A stretch of DNA of 63,973 nucleotides, filler included, from Reticulomyxa filosa (taxonomy: Eukaryota > Protista > Foraminifera): assembly GCA_000512085.1 (NCBI GenBank). It is 14 parts of 14 records of this genome, joined end to end, with 100 filler letters (N's around TTAATTAATTAA, not from the genome) between each part and the next. Parts side by side here need not be neighbours in the genome. Positions count along the whole stretch, not along the records: positions 30,784 to 38,953 come from ASPP01004467.1; 13 more parts are not named here. The stretch is one strand, 5' to 3'. Positions 4,457 through 37,550 of the stretch are shown here, piece by piece (the stretch's first letter is position 1; each line of letters starts with the position of its first letter). Under the pieces are notes generated by a model. That model was not told where the DNA came from. It did not search any database and was given only the letters and a program-made list of their open reading frames with translations. A program made the translations under genes and the position numbers.

Positions 4457-5138
4457 GCCAAGTAGAACGGGCATTCGGCGCGGTTGGGGCAGCCGGCTTT
4501 CAGGCAGCCGTGGCGGTCGTTGGTGACGCGGCGCCACAGCTCGTCCTGGATGTTTTCCGGCCAGCTGTCGCGGTCGCCGTTCCAGCGGCGGTAATGGAAG
4601 GCGTCGGCCAGCTGGCGCAGGGCGTCGATCTCGGCCTGTTCCGGCTTGCGCTCCCACAGGGCCATGCTCGGGTCCATCGCCAGCAGTTCGCCCTGGGCGG
4701 TGTCGGCTGTCAATTGGTACAGGCGGTACGGGCACAGGTAGCGGCCGCGGCCCTTGGCCAGCGCAAAGGTCACCGCCAGGCCGCTTTTGTCGATCATGAA
4801 CGGCAGGTCGCGGTTGACCAGCTGTTCCTGCAGCGCGATGGTGGCACTGGTGACCACCAGTTTCTTGCCGCGCGACTTGGCCATTACGCCGCCGGCCAGC
4901 AGATAGGCCAGGCTCTTGCCGACACCGGTGGGGCCTTTCCACCACCACGATGCTGTCCCCGCTATTGTCTTCCGGCTCCTGCTCGTTATCCGTGGGCGGC
5001 ATGGTGCAGCGGCCGAAGGCGTTGGCAATTTCGGCCAGCATGCGGCGCTGCGCCGCGCGCGGACGGAAGCCGGGGCAGGTTGTCGGAAATGGCGCGGTAA
5101 TGGTCGCGCAGCAGGTTCTTTTCGATGTCGGTCAGCAT
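4457..5138 (-). CDS. dinG: ATP-dependent DNA helicase DinG, N-terminal part (two homopolymer frameshifts)
   Basis: Pieced across three frames: 'MLTDIEK..', 'RAAQRRMLAEI', Walker A 'GPTGVGKSLAYL', 'SATIALQEQL..RDLP', 'KGRGRYLC' and Fe-S Cys 'GCLKAGCPNRAECPF'. GC-rich bacterial contig. Confidence 0.9.
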
Positions 5139-5309
5139 GGGCGGCATTGTAACGGATTGGGGCGGTGGCTGCTGGCAAGGCGACATCGGCTACGCTGTTT
5201 TGCGACTGCAGCATGACGCATGGTGCGGCTGTGCTTACGATAGCGCCAAACAACGCCGCAGCGACGGCCATAACAGCACGACAGACAGCATAAAAAACGC
5301 AGTATCAAG

Positions 5310-5314
5310 AGGAG
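5310..5314 (+). promoter_or_regulatory. Shine-Dalgarno site of the decarboxylase gene
   Basis: AGGAG 7 nt upstream of the ATG at 5322. Confidence 0.7.
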
Positions 5315-5321
5315 AGCACCG

Positions 5322-6006
5322 ATGAATCCGGTGAGCAGAGTGTTGGTGGTGAGTGATGACGCCGCCTGGCGCAGCGATGTACTGGCGGCGCTGGAGGCTG
5401 TAACGGGCAAGATGGCCAACCCGTTCGGCCTGGTGTTCCAGGGGGTTGGCCGCAGCAGCGAGGCGCTGGAGCGCGTGGGCTGCGATGGCGAGATCCAGAT
5501 CGTGCTGATCGACAAGGGCCTGAAAGAGAAGGGCGCCACCCAGCCGGCGGTACAGCTGGCCAACCAGATCAACCAGCTGCGCCCCGAGCTGTCGCTGTAC
5601 ATCCTGCTGCAGGATGACGACGAGAAAGTGCTGATGGAAGAGCTGGCCAGCCACGCGATTGACGGTTACTTCTACCGCGACGAACGCGATTTCAACGGCT
5701 GGTTCCGCATTCTGGCTGCCGAGATGGGCGAGAAGGCGGCCACGCCGTTCTACGACAAGCTCAAGCAATACGTGCGTATGGCCAAGGATTCGTGGCACAC
5801 GCCGGGCCACGCCGGTGGCGACTCGCTGAAAGGCAGCCCGTGGGTGGGCGACTTCTACGACTTTGTCGGCGAAGAGATGCTGCGCGCCGACCTGTCGGTG
5901 TCGGTGCCGATGCTGGATTCGCTGTTGCATCCCACCGGCGTCATTGCCGAGGCGCAAACCCTGGCTGCCAAAGCGTTTGGCGCCCGCAAAACCTATTTCG
6001 CTACCA
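5322..6006 (+). CDS. PLP-dependent Orn/Lys/Arg decarboxylase, N-terminal part
   Basis: Receiver-like wing domain, then 'DSWHTPGHAGG', 'RADLSVSVPMLDSLLHPTGVIAEAQ.LAAKAFGARKTYFAT'. Truncated by the contig end. Confidence 0.9.
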
Positions 6007-6106
6007 NNNNNNNNNNNNNNNNNNNNNNNNNNNNNNNNNNNNNNNNNNNNTTAATTAATTAANNNNNNNNNNNNNNNNNNNNNNNNNNNNNNNNNNNNNN
6101 NNNNNN

Positions 6107-6145
<39 letters not shown>

Positions 6146-9100
6146 CATATTTGTTTTTTTTTCTATTTACACGTACCAAACTCATGTCATCCTCTGCAAT
6201 TGCATTATCTTCTTCGATTTGCAATGGCAACTCTTCGACAGCATTTGGAGCAGGCTCTTCATTTTCTTCTGGAAGCACCTCTTCTCTATCTTGTTCCTCG
6301 TCATTTTCAGTTTCGTTTCTCACGTTCAACTCTGCCTGGTTGTCTTCGATGACTCTGTTCGCGTCGGCAGCATTTTCCTCTTGCAATTCCATTCCGGTTC
6401 GTTCCTGTGCAGAGATCATTTCATTTGCATTGGACCGTATGGTGTTCATATGATTGGATCCATTTCTAGTGATTTCGACGTCATTGATTGAATTGTTTTG
6501 TTCCAATTCGTCTGTTCGATCTTCTCGTCCATTGTCATTTTCTTTACCATCGATGTCTTCTCTTTCATCGGGATGGACATTCATGTTTTCATCTTCCTCG
6601 TCTACATCATCGTCATCATCCTCTTCTACTTCATCCTCTTCAACCTCTTCGTCTTCCACATCCTCAACATCTTCGACTTCTTCGTCATCCTGTTCCCGAT
6701 CTTCTTCGTCGTCCTCGTCGTCTTCATCTTCATTGTCGTCCTCGTCTTGCTCTGTCTCTTCGTCATCTTGTCCAGTTTCTTCTGCACCACGTCGTTCAAT
6801 GTTTCGACTGGACATGCCAGGCGAGCGGGACCGCGATCGGCTACGACTCCGGCTTCGACTTTGACTGTGCACGCTTTGATCTGCTTGCGGCTCCGCATCG
6901 ACTCCAGGAAGAATTGCGCCATTCACTTCAAATTCAATTGGTGGATTTGTCATCGGTATGTTTGTCATTGTAATATCCATGTCCAGATCCAAATCATGGC
7001 GGTTATCAATGTTATCTAACAAGCGGTCAATGACCTCCATTGTCTCATTCACGGAGTCATTCAAAAATATCTCACGAGGATGTGATGAATCCAACGGTGA
7101 AGGCGGTGCAATCTCAAACCGTCCCATCGCTCCACTGAAAGGAGACGGACTGATCAAGCCATCTCCACTTTTGCTATTTCTCAGCGGTCGATGTTGATTG
7201 AGTGGACTGGTCAAACTCTGTTTCGATGAGATTGGGTGTCGTAATGGGAAGTATGAATCGACTTCACAAAGAGATTTGATCAATTTAATTGCTGGATCGA
7301 CAATCAAATGTGCCTCTTTTTCAGGCTAAACAACAAAGAATCAAATGTATTCATACACACATTTATTGTTTGTTCGTGCATACACAATTAACGAATTCTA
7401 TGATATTACAAACACTGTTTTGAATTGAACATACCAACAGTCTCGTGTCGATTAACATGCACAAGGATTGTACCAGGGATTTCTCAAGCATCAATCGAGC
7501 TGCAATGCGTGAGGATTTATCTTTGAAGTTTTTAATAAAGGATCGTAGCAATTCTAAGTCTGCAGCGACGCAGCTGATGATTTGAAAAATTTGATCCATT
7601 TCTTTGTGTCCGTTGACCAAGTTTTTGGTAAGCGAATCGACATGAGTGACCAACAAAGCCACAATTTTTTCGAGAGCGTGTTTTTCGGCGATGGGCAAGT
7701 GAGGAGTGTTTTGTGCATTGACCAAAGTTGACAATAATTCCATTGCCAATTTGCTGCTGCGATTGCTCATAATTATTCGCGATTCTAAATGATTTGATGC
7801 AGCGACAACCGAGTACGGCAAGCAGCGATCGACCACAAATTGTATGAATGTTTTTCCACGGGTCATATAGCTAATTACAAACTGATTGGTTTATTTGGAC
7901 AAACGTGCAACAATTCACATTTTATTTTTTCCTCTTCGTTATTGTTTCATTTACATATACACACACACATACAAAAAAAAAAAAATTACTTTTGATAAGG
8001 CTGGATAAACGTGAACGACATTTTTTACAACGTTCAACATATCTTCTGGACTGAACAATCGATGTGATGCCATCAATGCAATTAAGTGGCCACGAGAAAT
8101 CAATTTATCTTTTTCCTTGTCTTTTTCTTTCTCTTTTTCTTTGGATTCTTTTTTTGACGTGCTTTCTTCTTTTTGCAAGCTCTGAGAAGAGTAATTGGTT
8201 TGTACCATTTGCATGTCTCCGTCATTGTCTAACTCTTCATTTGCGGCATTGTTTGGTCGTTCCTGTTCCGTTTGCGTTTTTTTCAAGTGCACGTCTACCA
8301 CTCCATCCATCAACAATATGACATCGACAATCAAGTCCATAATGGTCTGCAAAGGTACGGATAAATGCGACCACGTGGAGGAATCATCAACAGCCATCAA
8401 AGTTGGCACGTGAGACGAAGGTACGCGATTGTCCGAATTGCCAAAAGGCGACAGTTTGGTTGATTGTTGAGACGACACAGCCGTCGTTTCAGGATTTTCT
8501 CTTCCAATTGCACTTGCTGTTGATGCATTGTTGTCCGGTGTTACTTGGGTTTGTGATACTTGTTGATTGGAATTCGTTGGAGTTGTCGACACGCCATTCT
8601 GTTCAGTTTGACTCTTTTCTTTCACAGACGCTGCTGCATTATCTTTTTATTTCGTCGTCCGTGTATTTTCATTTGTTTATTGTTCATCCCTTTATTAATA
8701 TAACAAAAAAAAAAAAGAAAATGCAAATAAATTTGATAAATACCTTTTCGCCTGCGAATGAGTCGGCTGCCACCAGAGTTGTTCATTTGTACTCCGTTGC
8801 GAATATCAATAGTAAATCGTTTGGAATCAACGAAAACGTCGACACAATGTCGTAACTCGTCCAAATTGGTCATATCTTTGGCGATGCATTGCTGCAAAAA
8901 TTCTTTGTATAATTTTTCAACGTTTGCAGAATTTGCCTCATCGTAAGAGCCCCACAAACAAGTTCTCGGGTCTTGAGATTCCCATTTTCCAGGATGTTCC
9001 AGTTCCAAGATCAAATTTTTTTTGCACTTTTCGATTGCTTGATGCGATGATACTTTGACTATATTTCGATGTTTCTTTATCGAGCAGCATCGTTGTAATG

Positions 9101-30884: not shown

Positions 30885-33491
30885 GCAACAATGATAGCAA
30901 GAGTAAACAGACAGTCGACAACACTGAGAAGAAACTAAGAAAAGATGCAATCAAGAACTTTCTCAGCGACGATCGCTTGTTGAGCGATGACGACGTGATC
31001 ATGATCGACAAAAGTGAAATCACCGGCAAGAGCAAAGACACGACAAAAAAAGAAAGCAATATGCCAATGAATCCGAGCAAGCCAACTCCAAAGGAAGCAA
31101 CGCCAAATGTAAAACAAAAGTCAAAAAAAAAACAAAAAACGCAAAGGAATAATATCCCAACCAACTACGTCGACTACTACCACTACTACTACCACTATCC
31201 AACCAATCACGAAGACAACCACAACCACCACCCAATCAACGACTACTTCGCATTGGATGGACCCTGCTACCCAACCGACTACTACTGTCCGACTAATACC
31301 TTCTATCCAATCAAAAGCGCCATCACAAGCACAGGTACAATCACAGGTACAATCACAGATGCGACCGCAAACACAAACACAAGCACAGGTGCAACCACGA
31401 TCACAAATACAAATACAATCACAACCACAACCACAACCACAAACACTGACGCAAGCGCAATTGCGAGTGCAACTGTATATACACGCGCGAGCACAAGCAC
31501 AAGCGCACGCGCAAGCGGAGGCAGAAGCAAAAGCGAAAGCAAAGCTAGAGAAAAAAAAAGCAAAGAAGGACAAGCATGCGCCGAAAATTGCGAACAGTTT
31601 GATGATTCAGCAGGTGGACGAAACGAAAAAGAAAAAGTCGAAAAAATCGGGACCTTCGCAGTCAGCCGTGAATGTGGCACTGATGGAGGCACCTCCAAAA
31701 TCGGTGAAACTATCCCCCAAAAATTGTCGCTGGGAAGACCAAGAAGATAAACTATTAATCAGATGGGTAAACCACCAAATGAAAATTGAAGACAAACCAC
31801 GAATATCCAATCGAATTTGGATGAACATACAGAGCACATTTTTCCCGAATCGATCTGTTGCTGCAGTACGAGGCCGATGGTATTTTCTACACAAAATATA
31901 TGGCGAAGATTCGTTCGATATGCCCATTGGAGATATTAATGCATTATCGTCCATGGCTTCTTACGATCGAATGCAAGCCCTTTCTGCCGCAGAGTCCAAT
32001 CTCTTCGATAATACCTCCGTGTTCGATATAGCCAGCGATACTCAGCATAAAAAAAGGCAACGCGATTGCGATGTACAAAACAATAATCAAGCTTTCGCTT
32101 CATCTCAGTCAATCCCACACTCGCCTTTGTCAAGAGCGCCAAGCTGCCGTGACTTACCGAAGCCACTAGAAGTCTGTTTCAATTCTCCAGACGATCCTTT
32201 CCCTTCAGATCAAGGACATAAACAAAGGAGCACACTAAGGGACGCGCTAAACAATATGCCAAAAAAAAGACAAGAGCAAACCCAAGTACATATCAAAAGA
32301 TAAACCTAAGTATGTATCAAAAGATAAACCAAAGTATATATCAAAAGATAAACCAAAGGATATACCAAAGGATATGCTAAAGGATGCACCAAAGAATGTA
32401 CCAAAAAATACGCCAAAGAATATTCCAAAGGATGCACCAAAAAATGCGCCAAAAAGTGTATCAAAGAATGCGCCAAAAAGTGTATCAAAGAATGCACCAA
32501 AAAAAAAAAAAAAAAAAAAAAAAAGACCTCATCAAAGGGTGAATCAGAGAAGACATCAAAGAAAAAATCAAAGCGTAAATCAAGGAATAAACTAAGGGAT
32601 TCACCAAAATATTCATCCGCGGATTCATCAGATTCATTAATGAATTCAGCAACGAGCTCAGCAATGATACCGCCAACGAGTTCATCAGCAGCATCGTCAA
32701 CGAGTTCATCAGCAGCATCATCAACGAGTTCATCAGCAGCATCATCAACGAGTTCATCAGCAACATCGTCAACGAGATCATCAAATTCATCAACAAACTC
32801 GCCAACGAAATCATCAAAGAATAAAAATAATAAATCAAAGAATACACCAAAGAGTGTATCGAAGGATACATCAAAGAATACGCCAAAGAATATACTAAAG
32901 AATATATCAAAGAATACGCCAAAGGATACACTAAAGAATACGCCAAAGGAGAGAGCAAGGTATAAATCAAAGAGTGTACCACGTGACACGAGTCGGAGTA
33001 GAAGTCGAAAGAGAAAGACCAAAGTTTGTCTTTGTGAAAACTTTTTTTTTATTTATTACAATGAATATATTATGTAAAATGGTGTTGTTTGAAAGCCTAC
33101 GCACAATAAGCCCGACCAAGTTAACAAAGATATTACAATGAAAGAATACCCCTCTGGCGGCAATGATACACTTTTCAAGATAGATGACCTTCCCAAAAAT
33201 ATCATCAACAATGAACAAATATTAATAGAATGTGCTCCAGATTTACCAGAACTTGAGCGCGATTATACCACTCCATTCCCACCACGAAAGACAAGAAGCT
33301 TTGAAGTGACGTTGGAAGTGGATGATCGTAATCCCCACTTACCACCTATTTTCATTCATACTCCGACCCCTATATTAACAGAGAGTAATTTGGAAGCCCA
33401 CAATGCACTCTTACAAAACAATGATATTAAATTGTCACCATCCTCAGTCAAACCCTTGGACGTTTCAACAGGACCTCCTCCCATTCAATAA
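30784..33491 (+). CDS. Low-complexity nuclear protein with a single Myb/SANT-like domain, 5' truncated, frameshifts at A-runs
   Basis: 'WEDQEDKLLIRWV...IWMNIQSTFFPNRSVAAVRGRW' has three spaced Trp. Flanked by poly-Asn, Gln-X, K-x-x-P and Ser-rich repeats. Last exon is about 33138-33491. Confidence 0.65.
32284..32950 (+). repeat. Coding minisatellites: 24-bp and 12-bp units (KYISKDKP / KNAP) and 24-bp ACGAGTTCATCAGCAGCATCRTCA units
   Basis: Periodicity read directly at 32284-32500, 32676-32775 and 32838-32950. Confidence 0.85.
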
Positions 33492-33833: not shown

Positions 33834-36510
33834 TTAAAACATATTAAACATTCCTTGCACTTCGCAAACATCATCGTCATCTTCTTCGAAGTTTTGGTCC
33901 ACTACTTTCGCTTTTTTTTCGTCTTCCTCGTCATCAAATGCAACTTCTTCATCAGAGCCACTTTCTTGTTCAGTTTCCGTTTCGGTTTCAGTTTCACTGT
34001 CAAAGAAAAAACGACCCCGTGAAGTTGTCGACAAATCGACAACATTGCTGTGAGAAACCCAGGCAATTTTTAAATAGGCCGATTCAGAGTCACTTTTGGA
34101 CGGTGTGACAGGTCTAGGAATGACAGGCTCGTTGAAATCAGGATGCAAAGCAGCCAAAAACTCTTCATAATTGATTTTACCATCCAAATCAATGTCTGCC
34201 CAATCCACTGCAGTTTCAGTTCTGGTTACTTGAACTCGGGGAAGGGCTTTTTCTTCTTCATTTCCTTTTAAATTGCCCTCCAGCCCAAGCAACTTTCGTG
34301 CCTTGTTATTGGTTCTTGTTTCTTCTTCTTCCAATTGAAGAATTTTATCCTGTAGCTCTTTCTTGGTAATAAACCCGTCACTGTCTATATCCAAAGCGCG
34401 AAAAGTCTGATACAAACGTTCGTCAGTTGCAACGAGTCGTTGAAATGCAAAGGCGGTCAATAGTTCCTCGAAATCGATTTCTTTGGAATTGTCCAAGTCA
34501 ATAGATTGGAACATACACTCTAAATCCCTTTCACTGTATCCTAACTTGTAGCTATTCATTGCTTTTTTGAATTCCGGCAACGACAGTTTGTTGTCTTTAT
34601 TTTCATCAAATTCGCGGAACCACGCCTCTACTCTTTTGTATTCTGCAGTTGGCAATTGATGCGCCATAATTTGAGAGATCAATACTCGGAATTTACATTG
34701 ATTGGAAAATTTGGTAAGTGCGTCATGAATGGTGAAGTCCAACGTCTTATCACTAGCCGTTTTGAACCAAGGGTGATCCAAGGCTTCTCTTACTGTGATA
34801 CGGTCCTTGACGGATTTGGTCAGCATTTTTGAAATCAGGTCTCGAACATCTTGTGAAACGACTCGATTGGCCGGAAACCATGGACCCAGGCCTTCTTTTT
34901 GGATCGGGTTGAATCCTTTGCAAATCTTTGCGAAAATGCGCCCACTCGTCGCAAAGTCGGACAGCTCTTTGCTTTCTTTATCATCGAAAAAGGGTGGATA
35001 ACCAAACATCATATAATATAATATCACACCACAGCTCCATACATCTGCTGCGGCGTCATACTCTCCGTGTATCACTTCCGGTGCTACAAAATGGGCTGTA
35101 CCCACCAATCCTTTGATTTTCGTCAATCGCGGAACTCCATGAGACATTCCAAAGTCCACCAATTGCACTGGCGCATCAGCAGCTTTGCTGGCAAACATCA
35201 CATTGTTTGGTTTCAAGTCCAGATGCGCAATGAAATTCGTGTGCAAAAATTGTACTCCTTCCAACATTTGCTTCATTATTTTCGCCACCTCTGTTTCACG
35301 CATATCTCGCTTCTTGCTCATGAAATCCTCCAAGGTGCCTCCTGCGCAGTAGTTAGTCACCAGGTACAAATAATTGTGGTCCTCAAAGACGTCATACAGC
35401 TATTGTGTCATATCGTTGCAATGTAATATACGTATATGTCAAGCAAAAAGGGATGAGAAAAAAGTACTTTTTTTTTTTGTCAAAAAAAAGGGGAAGAAGG
35501 TTTTTTTTTCTTTAATTAAAAAAAATGTATATGTGTATGTATACGTTCAAGCATACATATAACCAATAAAAACTTGTTCCCCCCCCCCCTTTCTGTCATT
35601 CTTTTGAGTTTTTTTTTTTCTTGTCATCTCTTTCCTATTTTAAAAAAAAAAAACTTTAATAATGTTGCGATAGCCCGGGACGCGTTTGTTTCTTCGTTTT
35701 CGTTTAAGAAGGCGCAAAATTTCCAATTCACGTTGCATCATGACGATCATATTTTTTTGCTGTCGAAAGCGGGCTTTTGAAATTTTTTTGACAACAAAAA
35801 CCCTTTTTTTCTTTTGAATGAATTTGGTTTTGCTGCGACATTTGTAGCAGTTGCCAAATTCCCCACAGCCCAAATAGTCATTGTCCCAATCGCACAAGTA
35901 TTCGTTGGTGAACTTGCGTTTGCGGCCTTCGTCGTCAGGACTCAGTATCTCCACGGTATTTTGTCTTTTGATTTGCGGTTCTCCGAGTAGCTTTTGAGCC
36001 TTTGGCTTCAGCACTTCCATTTGCGGGGCGTCAATGTTGCGTTTGTCTGGCTTCTTGGTGTTCAAGCTGGGAATATCCTGATTGGTGGTGGGTGAGATAC
36101 TCGTGTTGGCAGCCAGGTCTCCGTTCGAGTCCACGCTGAGACTTGCTGTGGTGTCCTCGCGATCGAGCGAGGGTTTGGATTTGATGATTTCACTGTCAGT
36201 AATTCGTAGTGACACTGTGGCCACAGTCGTCACCGCTGTCGTTGCAGTCGTCGTTGTTGTTGTTGTTGTTGCCGACGTGGATGCTGTTGTGGTTGGACTG
36301 TTCGCCGTTGCTTTGGGATTGATTTCTTTGGGATTGGTTTCTTTGTTTTTGGGAGAAGGTTCCTTCGTTTTGGAGTTGCTTGCAGTAGAAGCAGTGGTCG
36401 AAGTCGTAGGACTCGTAGTAGTGGTGTTGGTAGCATGCGGAGAAGTTGTAGGACTAGTGGAAGTCAAGGTAGTAATGGTCGACTTACCATTGTTCTTGAT
36501 AGCCTTGTTA

Positions 36511-36551
<41 letters not shown>

Positions 36552-37550
36552 GCTATTATTACTATTATTATTGTTGTTGTTGTTATTAGGCTGCTTGTTG
36601 TTCGCAGGTAAGGTGTTCGTCTTGGGCGTGATGGTCTTGGACGACGCCGTGTACGTATTAGTATGCGTAATCATAGTCGCAGTGGCATTACCAACAGGAC
36701 TGGCGTGGACCGTGTTGGCTCTGGGCTTGGTGGTGCCTTTGGTATCAGCATGGGGACTAGGGCTTGCATGGGGACTAGGACTCGCATGGGAATTACCATT
36801 GGCATTAGTATTAGACTTGGGCTTGGTTCTGGGCTTGATTTTGGAATGCTTGACGGGGGCATCACTTTCGCTGCGGATGATGACTTCGTCTTCTTTGTTC
36901 TTAGAACTGGTAGTTTTGTGGTCATCTTCCGACGAGCCTTGCGCGCCAGGCGAGGACGCTGGCGACGAGGTAGGCCCACTTCGAACGTTCATCGTGGAAA
37001 AAAGGGGATGTGGCTGCAGCTTGACTGGCGATAATGCGCCCGAGCGCACATGAACGCCGTGCAAATGCTTGCAATGGAAATACGCTATGCCGCCGATCGT
37101 GCCGCTATGCTGTCCGCTTTTTTCATCCAATTCCACGCCATACCAATAACCTGATGTGCTCTCCACACTCCCTACAAACTTCACTACTCCTTTGCCACGC
37201 TTCGCTACTTCCACACGATCGTTCACTGTTATCCTCGTCGACGATGGACTCTTCCGCGTTATGCTGATAATCTGACGCTGCTCCACCAACATACCGTGGC
37301 CTGGCTTACACTTAAAGTAACGCCGAGATTCTTTGCTTGGCTGTCCGTTGTGCTGACCCTCTGCAAATTCCAAATCTATACCGTACCATATTTTTGTAAA
37401 TGTGTCGTCCGGTCCTATAAACTGCACGCACCCTGTCGAACGCGACTTGTTATTCGATATATCCACTACATCTCCTATACACACTTTCATATCCTGATCA
37501 TCTGGCAATGTTTCTGCCCTTTTTTGGCGAACACCTGCCCGACTCATCAC
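33834..37550 (-). CDS. Tandem CAP-Gly + calcium-dependent protein kinase (CDPK) fusion; exons 37550-35655 and 35399-33834, about 1153 aa
   Basis: Two CAP-Gly domains ('WYGIDL..AEGQHNG..RRYFKCKPGHG', 'WYGVELDEKSGQHSG..YFHC..HG'). Kinase motifs LGCGEFG, VVKKI, HLDLKPNN, DFG and APE. Four EF-hands (DENKDNKLSLPE, DLDNSKEIDFEE, DIDSDGFITKKE, DIDLDGKINYEE). A phase-0 GT-AG intron joins 'RNIIK' to 'LYDVFED'. Confidence 0.9.

What the first reader, a model, noticed from the sequence alone, without database searches (positions are those of the whole stretch)
33834..37550. Tandem CAP-Gly domains fused to a complete calcium-dependent protein kinase
Seen: one two-exon gene encodes two CAP-Gly domains (about 37030-37480), a long Thr/Asn/Ser/Pro linker, an intact Ser/Thr kinase and four EF-hands. 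The first exon contains both the CAP-Gly domains and kinase subdomains I-III in one open frame, so the fusion does not depend on my splice model. Established: CAP-Gly domains bind tubulin/EB C-terminal tails (CLIP-170, p150Glued, TBCB/TBCE), and plant and alveolate CDPKs normally have a short variable, often acylated N-terminus. I do not know this architecture from characterised proteins. Inference: a microtubule-tethered Ca2+ sensor-kinase that couples Ca2+ signals directly to microtubule remodelling. This would be notable if the host is a foraminiferan, whose reticulopodial microtubules are exceptionally dynamic.
Basis: partly seen in the sequence, partly recalled or inferred. Interest (0 to 1): 0.8.

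Follow-up and report, generated by a model that had tools for sequence, protein, structure and literature searches.

The report
Foraminiferan CAP-Gly calcium-dependent protein kinase
A gene of the foraminiferan Reticulomyxa filosa really does fuse two microtubule-type CAP-Gly domains to a complete calcium-dependent protein kinase; the public annotation splits it into two genes, the same fusion is conserved in other foraminifera, and whether it binds microtubules is still untested.

Summary
The piece is Reticulomyxa filosa contig ASPP01004467.1. On the minus strand, exon 1 (37547-35655) encodes two CAP-Gly domains, a 370-residue Thr/Asn/Ser/Pro linker and kinase subdomains I-IV in one open frame. 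A 255-nt GT-AG intron (35654-35400) follows. Exon 2 (35399-33834) encodes the rest of the kinase, a CDPK junction, four EF-hands and an acidic tail.

A contig from a public run joins 35655 to 35399 exactly. The deposited annotation splits the gene into 643-aa and 495-aa products, and the second starts in mid-kinase.

The fusion is not unique to this gene. A Reticulomyxa paralogue has the same layout. CAP-Gly + CDPK proteins also occur in Nonionella stella, Bolivina argentea, another NCBI assembly and three environmental contigs. All fall in one well-supported clade beside plain foraminiferan CDPKs.

I found no paper describing the architecture. CAP-Gly on other kinases is known, in a trypanosomatid CAMK and in Monosiga receptor tyrosine kinases.

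Microtubule or EB tethering is plausible but only inferred. The fold and groove are conserved, but the GKNDG lysine is Gln in both domains here.

Verdict: a real, conserved, undescribed variant of a known kind, of moderate interest.

The parts
35655..37547 (-). Coding exon 1 (631 codons from the ATG at 37547): two CAP-Gly domains, the linker and the kinase N-lobe in one open frame.
   Evidence: The deposited 643-aa model uses the same start and the same donor site.
37257..37484 (-). CAP-Gly domain 1 (residues about 22-97), with GQHNG in place of GKNDG. It is the more divergent of the two across the family.
   Evidence: Pfam CAP_GLY, two stretches; PDB chain 1whk matches query residues 34-95; AF2 model strands 27-97; alignment A3.
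37023..37235 (-). CAP-Gly domain 2 (residues about 105-175), with GQHSG in place of GKNDG. It is well conserved across the family.
   Evidence: Pfam best stretch 109-170; CLIPR-59 1whh E 2.3e-15; Foldseek against p150Glued and CLIP-170 CAP-Gly, TMt 0.87-0.93, rmsd 1.2-1.4 A; ten invariant columns in A3.
35901..37022 (-). Low-complexity linker of about 370 residues, rich in Thr, Asn, Ser and Pro, with an Asn run.
   Evidence: Composition T64 N51 S47 P31 K31 in 355 residues; 0 of 20000 shuffles stayed open. Linker length varies from about 100 to 370 aa in relatives.
35655..35900 (-). Kinase N-lobe, subdomains I-IV: Gly loop GCGEFG at 35870, beta3 Lys in VVKKI at 35795, alphaC Glu at 35735; ends ...GYRNIIK.
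   Evidence: Pfam Pkinase positions 6-56; motifs; aligns with the complete kinases P0003, P0005 and P0006.
35400..35654 (-). Intron: 255 nt, GT..AG, phase 0, 28% G+C.
   Evidence: Contig record 3 of run X1 covers 35244-35396 and runs on into the last 15 nt of exon 1, which occur only once in the piece. Paralogue P0003 reads ...GYRNIIKLYDVFED... across the same point.
33834..35399 (-). Coding exon 2 (521 codons plus stop at 33834-33836): rest of the kinase, junction, four EF-hands and acidic tail.
34764..35399 (-). Kinase subdomains IV/V-XI: HLDLKPNN at 35225 (a non-RD kinase), DFG at 35156, APE at 35084, end at HPWF 34775.
   Evidence: Pfam Pkinase 73-263, E 2.8e-49; motifs.
34608..34763 (-). 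CDPK junction (autoinhibitory) segment: ASDKTLDFTIHDALTKFSNQCKFRVLISQIMAHQL...
   Evidence: Aligns residue by residue with the junction of plant CPK3 9vhu_A.
34161..34607 (-). Calmodulin-like domain with four EF-hand loops: DENKDNKLSLPE, DLDNSKEIDFEE, DIDSDGFITKKE, DIDLDGKINYEE. There is an insert of about 50 aa between EF3 and EF4.
   Evidence: Pfam EF-hand_1/5/6/7/8; loop scan; PDB CDPK alignment.
33837..34160 (-). C-terminal extension: conserved TPSKS..SAYL..W.SHSNV block, then an acidic run, ending ...GMFNMF-COOH.
   Evidence: The G[MV]F[NS][ML]F end is shared by the three Reticulomyxa paralogues only.

Best explanation
This is one gene of Reticulomyxa filosa for a protein of about 1152 residues. 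From the N-terminus it carries two CAP-Gly domains, a long disordered linker and a complete calcium-dependent protein kinase (a CAMK-type catalytic domain, a junction helix and four EF-hands).

Shown: the gene structure, the intact domains and motifs, the splice junction, and conservation of the fusion across foraminifera.

Inferred mechanism: the kinase core works like any CDPK. Ca2+ binding to the EF-hand lobe pulls the junction segment off the catalytic cleft and switches the kinase on. In place of the short, often acylated N-terminus that sends ordinary CDPKs to membranes, the CAP-Gly pair acts as the address module. Its most likely ligands are acidic-aromatic C-terminal tails (alpha-tubulin, EB1-type proteins). 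The flexible linker would then let the kinase reach substrates on or near microtubules, coupling Ca2+ transients to the microtubule system of the reticulopodia.

My odds: single fusion gene 0.95; functional Ca2+-regulated kinase 0.8; CAP-Gly pair targets tubulin or EB tails 0.5.
For: Domains and frames.

Splice: a contig of run X1 covers 35244-35396 and continues into CGCAACATTATTAAA, the last 15 nt of exon 1, which is unique in the piece.

Paralogue locus L003 (ASPP01006696.1): one ORF holds two CAP-Gly domains (E 1.3e-33), a linker of about 100 aa and a kinase N-lobe ending GYRNIIK, followed by the kinase/EF-hand exon.

Relatives with the same architecture:
- P0122: 945-aa full ORF in a 3010-nt contig of run ERR1719419.
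- P0123: 981 aa, JGI 3300037778.
- P0178: Bolivina argentea transcript.
- P0006: Nonionella stella transcript.
- P0005: single ORF in assembly GCA_024449935.1.
- ENA contig L006: collinear CAP_GLY, CAP_GLY, Pkinase and Pkinase+EF pieces.

Tree: every CAP-Gly bearer and the three Reticulomyxa copies form one clade (SH-aLRT 99), sister to foraminiferan CDPKs without CAP-Gly.

CDPK identity: the best PDB matches are CDPKs, aligned through the junction and EF-hands.

CAP-Gly identity: PDB sequence hits down to 2.3e-15; AF2 model pLDDT 78 with TMt up to 0.93 to p150Glued and CLIP-170 CAP-Gly; ten invariant columns in CAP-Gly 2 across the family, which argues for a conserved ligand.

Run X1 differs from the window mostly synonymously in the kinase (8 of 11 sites) and mostly non-synonymously in the linker (5 of 7).
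Against: No read or contig from Reticulomyxa itself links the CAP-Gly region to the kinase. Run X1 has about 3x depth and covers only 35959-36110 of exon 1 upstream of the kinase, so an internal start giving a CAP-Gly-less isoform cannot be excluded.

X1 is only guessed to be RNA. It is 95-97% identical to the window, so it is an allele, a strain or a very recent copy, not the window itself.

The GKNDG motif reads GQHNG and GQHSG here, and GPHNG and GHHNG in the paralogue. From my own knowledge of p150Glued and CLIP-170 work, that Lys contacts the C-terminal carboxylate or aromatic residue of EEY/F ligands.

No binding, activity or localisation was tested. The linker has no SxIP motif. CAP-Gly 1 is divergent, with large inserts in some relatives.
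Confidence: 0.6

Rival explanations
1. The fusion is real, but the CAP-Gly pair is not a microtubule or EB tether. It binds something else. One option is the kinase's own C-terminal acidic-aromatic tail, giving CLIP-170-style autoinhibition. Another is a different partner, as with the CYLD CAP-Gly domains. Either way it would add a second layer of regulation or a different address.
For: The motif Lys is replaced by Gln, His or Pro in all four Reticulomyxa CAP-Gly domains. The three Reticulomyxa paralogues end in G[MV]F[NS][ML]F-COOH after an acidic run, and P0123 ends ...SSEDY-COOH. CYLD CAP-Gly3 bound to ubiquitin is among the structural matches (7owc).
Against: The C-terminal aromatic end is not conserved in P0122 (ends ...EHGH) or P0006 (ends ...FDND). 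The other foraminiferan members keep Lys or Arg in the motif (GKHDG, GKHSG, GKHGG, GRHDG). The closest sequence and fold matches are tubulin- or EB-binding CAP-Gly domains.
Confidence: 0.3
2. There are two separate genes, as in the deposited annotation: a 643-aa CAP-Gly protein and a 495-aa kinase/EF-hand protein that merely lie next to each other.
For: The public annotation of ASPP01004467.1 calls them apart, and does the same at the paralogous locus.
Against: The 495-aa model starts at Pkinase profile position 91, so it lacks the Gly loop, the beta3 Lys and the alphaC Glu. Those lie in the same ORF as the CAP-Gly domains. The 643-aa model needs a 20-nt intron and adds 12 unrelated residues. 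An X1 contig joins 35655 to 35399. Relatives carry everything in one ORF.
Confidence: 0.03
3. The gene is a decaying or chimeric copy (a pseudogene or misassembly) with no function.
For: The R. filosa assembly is fragmented. The paralogue L003 shows a frame break inside the kinase C-lobe.
Against: Both exons here are open over 1152 codons. All catalytic and Ca2+-binding motifs are intact. The near-identical copy in X1 differs mostly synonymously in the kinase. The architecture is conserved across foraminifera.
Confidence: 0.03

Closest known systems
Canonical CDPKs (Toxoplasma CDPK1 3i79/3ku2, plant CPK3 9vhu, Cryptosporidium and Plasmodium CDPKs)
   Same: CAMK-type kinase, junction segment and four-EF-hand calmodulin-like domain in the same order. 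These are the best PDB matches (E 7.6e-53 to about 1e-46), aligned through the junction and EF-hands.
   Different: There is no short acylatable N-terminus: the protein starts MSRAG, without Gly2. Instead it has about 550 residues of CAP-Gly x2 plus linker. The catalytic loop is HLD rather than HRD across the whole clade. There is an insert of about 50 aa between EF3 and EF4 and a C-terminal extension of about 110 aa.
CAP-Gly proteins of the CLIP-170 / CLIPR-59 / p150Glued / TBCB-TBCE type
   Same: Same fold (TMt 0.87-0.93, rmsd 1.2-1.4 A). The tandem arrangement resembles CLIP-170 and CLIPR-59, and the groove aromatic residues are conserved. The family motif G[KR]H[DSG]G resembles the GKHDG of CLIPR-59.
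   Different: Pfam sees no coiled coil, zinc knuckles, ankyrin repeats or ubiquitin-like domain. The motif Lys is Gln here. The effector part is a kinase.
Trypanosomatid CAMK carrying a CAP-Gly domain (Parsons et al. 2005, PMC1266030, table 2)
   Same: A CAMK-group kinase combined with CAP-Gly in a protist; one gene each in T. brucei, T. cruzi and L. major.
   Different: That table lists the EF-hand CAMKs as separate entries, so it is not reported as a CDPK. I could not fetch its sequence, so neither homology of the fusion nor domain order was tested. It does not appear among the best 150 hits of the profile search.
Monosiga brevicollis RTKC receptor tyrosine kinases with a C-terminal CAP-Gly (PMC10263333)
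   Same: A kinase combined with CAP-Gly, which the authors interpret as a link to the cytoskeleton.
   Different: It is a transmembrane tyrosine kinase with a single CAP-Gly C-terminal to the kinase and no EF-hands.
CDPKs with another N-terminal targeting domain (PH-domain CDPK7 type)
   Same: A precedent for replacing the variable N-terminus of a CDPK with a folded address module. P0023 and P0026 carry PF00169 (PH) plus Pkinase plus EF-hands. The CDPK7 name is from my own knowledge.
   Different: That address is a lipid-binding PH domain, not a CAP-Gly.

Membership tests
Calcium-dependent protein kinase (CDPK) | Ser/Thr kinase domain of the CAMK group with intact catalytic residues | tested here: met
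   Pkinase positions 6-56 (exon 1) and 73-263 (exon 2); GCGEFG, VVKK Lys, alphaC Glu, HLDLKPNN, DFG and APE all present. HLD in place of HRD is a clade-wide deviation.
Calcium-dependent protein kinase (CDPK) | Junction (autoinhibitory) segment directly after the kinase | tested here: met
   Residues 213-260 of exon 2 align with the junction of 9vhu_A.
Calcium-dependent protein kinase (CDPK) | Calmodulin-like domain with four EF-hands on the same polypeptide | tested here: met
   Four loops with Asp at position 1 and Glu at position 12; Pfam EF-hand families above their cutoffs.
Calcium-dependent protein kinase (CDPK) | Short variable N-terminus, often myristoylated or palmitoylated | tested here: not met
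   The N-terminus is MSRAGV..., without Gly2, and 550 residues precede the kinase. This feature is typical of CDPKs, not strictly defining.
Calcium-dependent protein kinase (CDPK) | Kinase activity switched on by Ca2+ | not testable with these tools
   Needs an in vitro kinase assay with and without Ca2+.
CAP-Gly domain (PF01302) | Match to the family profile above the curated cutoff | tested here: met
   114.8 bits against a cutoff of 26.5, two stretches.
CAP-Gly domain (PF01302) | CAP-Gly beta fold | tested here: met
   AF2 model pLDDT 78; Foldseek TMt 0.87-0.93 and rmsd 1.2-1.4 A to p150Glued and CLIP-170 CAP-Gly.
CAP-Gly domain (PF01302) | GKNDG motif that lines the EEY/F-binding groove | tested here: not met
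   GQHNG (domain 1) and GQHSG (domain 2). Both Gly residues are kept, Lys is replaced by Gln, and Asn by His as in CLIPR-59. Relatives have GKHDG, GKHSG, GKHGG or GRHDG.
CAP-Gly domain (PF01302) | Binding of C-terminal acidic-aromatic tails of tubulin, EB1 or CLIP | not testable with these tools
   Needs peptide binding and microtubule co-sedimentation.
CLIP-170 family of plus-end tracking proteins | Tandem CAP-Gly followed by a long coiled coil and C-terminal zinc knuckles | tested here: not met
   Only CAP_GLY, Pkinase and EF-hand families are found; the region after the CAP-Gly pair is low-complexity.
Trypanosomatid CAP-Gly CAMK | Orthology of the kinase and the same domain order | not tested
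   Known only from table 2 of PMC1266030; no sequence was at hand.

The most novel reading that the evidence does not exclude
Foraminifera (perhaps Retaria more widely) invented, once, a CDPK whose address module is a CAP-Gly tandem. The kinase would sit on tyrosinated tubulin or EB-decorated microtubule ends and phosphorylate motors or microtubule regulators when Ca2+ rises. This would give a direct Ca2+ switch for the very fast microtubule assembly, disassembly and bidirectional transport of reticulopodia. In Reticulomyxa the protein's own acidic ...MF-COOH tail may also occupy the CAP-Gly groove as a second lock.
Probability: 0.3. Interest if true: 0.7.

Novelty: new variant of a known kind. 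Interest (0 to 1): 0.55.

Why it matters
Foraminiferan reticulopodia have some of the fastest microtubule dynamics and organelle transport known, and no regulator has been pinned down. A Ca2+-switched kinase with a built-in microtubule-type address domain, conserved from the naked freshwater Reticulomyxa to marine rotaliids, is a concrete candidate that can be cloned. It makes the Ca2+-to-microtubule link testable.

It also widens the known repertoire of CDPK targeting modules beyond acylation and PH domains. And it shows that the public R. filosa annotation hides the architecture by cutting the kinase domain in two at two loci, so database architecture searches would miss it.

Tried and rejected
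- Word-based protein searches with the CAP-Gly part of the window and of P0122 returned almost nothing. They did not even return the window's own 643-aa product, so they say nothing about distribution.
- The ESM Atlas feature search with P0005 and with P0122:1-560 gave only generic CDPK or kinase clusters and none with CAP_GLY.
- Literature searches for CAP-Gly with CDPK, calcium-dependent protein kinase, Reticulomyxa or kinome found no description of the fusion. They found only the trypanosomatid and Monosiga precedents.
- Searches for a Ca2+ link to Reticulomyxa microtubules gave nothing usable.
- The accession GCA_024449935 appears in no paper, so the organism of P0005 remains unnamed.
- No SxIP (EB-binding) motif occurs in exon 1.
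- Only one sequencing run held any of the gene, at about 3x and as contigs. It could confirm the splice but could not link the CAP-Gly part to the kinase in a transcript.
- The joined exon 1 + exon 2 protein was deliberately never built, searched or folded. Each exon was used separately by reference, and the tree used exon 2 alone for the window.
Full report
**What is there.**

Two long minus-strand ORFs carry the finding: 35640..37550 (636 aa from a GTG, 635 aa from the ATG at 37547) and 33834..35369.
- Pfam on the first ORF gives CAP_GLY twice (E 1.7e-33, 114.8 bits, cutoff 26.5) and the first 50 positions of Pkinase.
- Pfam on the second ORF gives Pkinase positions 73-263 (E 2.8e-49) and all the EF-hand families.

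**Gene model.**
- Exon 1 ends ...CGC AAC ATT ATT AAA at 35655.
- The next bases are GT, and the intron ends ...ACAATAG at 35400.
- Exon 2 starts CTG TAT GAC at 35399.
- The intron is 255 nt, 28% G+C and phase 0. Exons 1 and 2 are 1893 and 1566 nt.

The protein would have 631 + 521 = 1152 residues. I did not build, search or fold the joined protein. Every search used the exons separately by reference.

**Domain content in detail.**
- CAP-Gly 1 is at about 37484-37257 and CAP-Gly 2 at about 37235-37023.
- A linker of about 370 residues follows (T 64, N 51, S 47, P 31 among 355 residues).
- Exon 1 then carries the Gly loop GCGEFG (35870), the beta3 Lys in VVKKI (35795) and the alphaC Glu (35735).
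- Exon 2 carries HLDLKPNN (35225), DFG (35156), APE (35084) and the kinase end HPWF (34775).
- After the kinase comes a junction segment, then four EF-hand loops: DENKDNKLSLPE, DLDNSKEIDFEE, DIDSDGFITKKE and DIDLDGKINYEE.
- The protein ends with an acidic tail...GMFNMF.

The linker DNA never stayed free of in-frame stops in 20000 shuffles.

**Transcript evidence.** Only one public run held any of the gene (X1, 2015, kept as contigs, guessed to be RNA). Four short contigs lay on the gene at 95-99% identity.
- One contig covers 35244-35396 and then continues with 18 letters. Their reverse complement is CGCAACATTATTAAA + CTA.
- The first 15 of these are the last 15 nt of exon 1, a string that occurs only once in the piece. 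CTA is a synonymous variant of the first codon of exon 2. This is the predicted junction 35655|35399.
- Another contig covers 35959-36110 in exon 1.
- The differences from the window are mostly synonymous in the kinase (8 of 11) and mostly non-synonymous in the linker (5 of 7). That pattern fits a constrained kinase and a free linker.

Caveats: X1 is an allele, a strain or a very recent copy, not the window itself. No contig reaches the CAP-Gly region.

**The public annotation hides the architecture.** The deposited models are a 643-aa product (37547..35596) and a 495-aa product (35321..33834).
- The 643-aa product uses the same start and the same donor, then a 20-nt pseudo-intron and 12 extra codons.
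- The 495-aa product begins at Pkinase profile position 91, so it lacks the ATP-binding half of the kinase.

**Relatives.** With exon 2 as query, the nearest proteins are two R. filosa paralogues: RFI_09602 (71% identity) and RFI_08748 (64%). Next come two proteins that carry CAP_GLY + Pkinase + EF-hands. P0005 is a single 690-aa ORF in assembly GCA_024449935.1. P0006 is an 860-aa Nonionella stella transcript.
- RFI_09602 is cut by its contig edge, but it reads ...GYRNIIKLYDVFED... across the window's splice point.
- The RFI_08748 locus (L003) repeats the window's layout. One ORF (4653-5804) holds two CAP-Gly domains (E 1.3e-33), a linker of about 100 aa and a kinase N-lobe ending GYRNIIK. The kinase/EF-hand exon follows. 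This locus too is annotated as two genes.

A profile of the family (alignment A2, with the window's exons as separate rows) was searched against 1.84 billion representative proteins. It brought up three more members with two CAP-Gly domains:
- P0122: 945 aa, a complete ORF in a 3010-nt contig of run ERR1719419, with four near-identical copies in other samples.
- P0123: 981 aa, JGI sample 3300037778.
- P0178: a Bolivina argentea transcript.

An ENA metagenome contig (L006) also has CAP_GLY, CAP_GLY, Pkinase and Pkinase+EF pieces in a row on one strand.

In a quick maximum-likelihood tree of 41 CDPKs, with exon 2 alone representing the window, all CAP-Gly bearers and the three Reticulomyxa copies form one clade (SH-aLRT 99). 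Their sister clade (99) holds foraminiferan CDPKs without CAP-Gly. This fits a single fusion event inside a foraminiferan CDPK lineage. All named members are Foraminifera. The range outside them is untested, because only the best 150 of 928,545 hits could be inspected.

**Is each part what it seems?**
- *Kinase part.* The best solved relatives are CDPKs (plant CPK3 9vhu at E 7.6e-53, Toxoplasma CDPK1, Cryptosporidium and Plasmodium CDPKs). The alignment runs through the junction and EF-hands. It is a true CDPK core, with HLD in place of HRD throughout the clade.
- *CAP-Gly part.* PDB sequence hits reach 2.3e-15 (CLIPR-59) and include p150Glued, CLIP-170, CLIP-115, CAP350, KIF13B, TBCB and TBCE. 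An AF2 model of the tandem (pLDDT 78) superposes on p150Glued and CLIP-170 CAP-Gly at TMt 0.87-0.93 and rmsd 1.2-1.4 A.
- *Conservation.* CAP-Gly 2 has ten invariant columns across the family (W135, G137, L140, G145, H147, G149, Y156, F157, G164, R168). CAP-Gly 1 is looser and has 22-aa inserts in two members.
- *The deviation that matters.* The GKNDG motif reads GQHNG and GQHSG here, and GPHNG and GHHNG in the paralogue. It reads GKHDG, GKHSG, GKHGG or GRHDG in the other foraminifera. From my own knowledge of the p150Glued and CLIP-170 complexes, that Lys helps hold the C-terminal EEY/F residue. Binding of tubulin or EB tails is therefore likely for the family but less sure for the Reticulomyxa copies.

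**How it most likely works.**
- *Shown:* one gene, intact modules, conserved fusion.
- *Inferred from established CDPK biology:* Ca2+ loading of the EF-hand lobe removes the junction segment from the catalytic cleft.
- *Inferred from CAP-Gly biology:* the tandem replaces the usual acylated N-terminus as the address and probably docks on acidic-aromatic C-termini of alpha-tubulin or EB proteins. The long disordered linker serves as a leash.
- *The rival I take seriously (0.3):* the CAP-Gly pair binds something else. One candidate is the protein's own C-terminal tail. The three Reticulomyxa paralogues end G[MV]F[NS][ML]F after an acidic run, and P0123 ends SSEDY. P0122 and P0006 do not end this way.
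- *Rivals I consider essentially excluded:* the two-gene annotation and a pseudogene reading.

**Novelty.** No paper in the searchable library combines CAP-Gly with CDPK or with Reticulomyxa. CAP-Gly on a kinase is not new in itself. Trypanosomatids have one CAMK with CAP-Gly (PMC1266030). Monosiga RTKC receptors carry a C-terminal CAP-Gly that is read as a cytoskeletal link (PMC10263333). CDPKs with a PH domain show that the N-terminus can be swapped for a folded address (P0023 and P0026).

I therefore rate this a new variant of a known kind. It is real, conserved, undescribed, and of moderate interest because it offers a testable Ca2+-to-microtubule link in foraminifera.

Noticed in passing
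window 35596-37547 and 33834-35321: The deposited R. filosa annotation cuts this kinase domain in two: a 643-aa model ending after a 20-nt pseudo-intron, and a 495-aa model that starts at Pkinase profile position 91. The same split is present at the paralogous locus, so database architecture searches cannot see the fusion.
   Followed up: yes
L003:6001-7531 (ASPP01006696.1): The paralogue RFI_08748 has a frame break inside the kinase C-lobe: ORFs 6001-6888 and 6359-7531 overlap in different frames around ...EGFQPIQK / EGLGPWFP. This is either a sequencing or assembly indel or a decaying copy. The annotated protein skips about 40 residues there.
   Followed up: partly
window 33837-33900; C-termini of P0003, P0004 and P0123: The three Reticulomyxa paralogues end in G[MV]F[NS][ML]F-COOH after an acidic run, and P0123 ends ...SSEDY-COOH. 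These are possible self-ligands for the CAP-Gly groove, but the feature is not conserved in P0122 or P0006.
   Followed up: partly
window 35225 (HLDLKPNN): The whole CAP-Gly-CDPK clade has HLD instead of the HRD of ordinary CDPKs. It is therefore a non-RD kinase, which may not need activation-loop phosphorylation.
   Followed up: no
window 31257-32303 (+), inside the annotated 551-aa gene 30911-32824: The neighbouring plus-strand ORF has only a weak Myb-like match (PF13921, E 0.0055, below the cutoff) amid long low-complexity Gln/Thr/Lys-rich stretches.
   Followed up: partly
window 36990-37547: The word-based protein search with the CAP-Gly region did not return the window's own annotated 643-aa product, although the 495-aa product was returned for exon 2. 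Blanks from that tool are therefore uninformative here.
   Followed up: no
window 33940-36110 (run X1): The only public run holding the gene differs from the window by 2-5% per contig. It therefore represents another strain, an allele or a very recent duplicate of this gene.
   Followed up: partly
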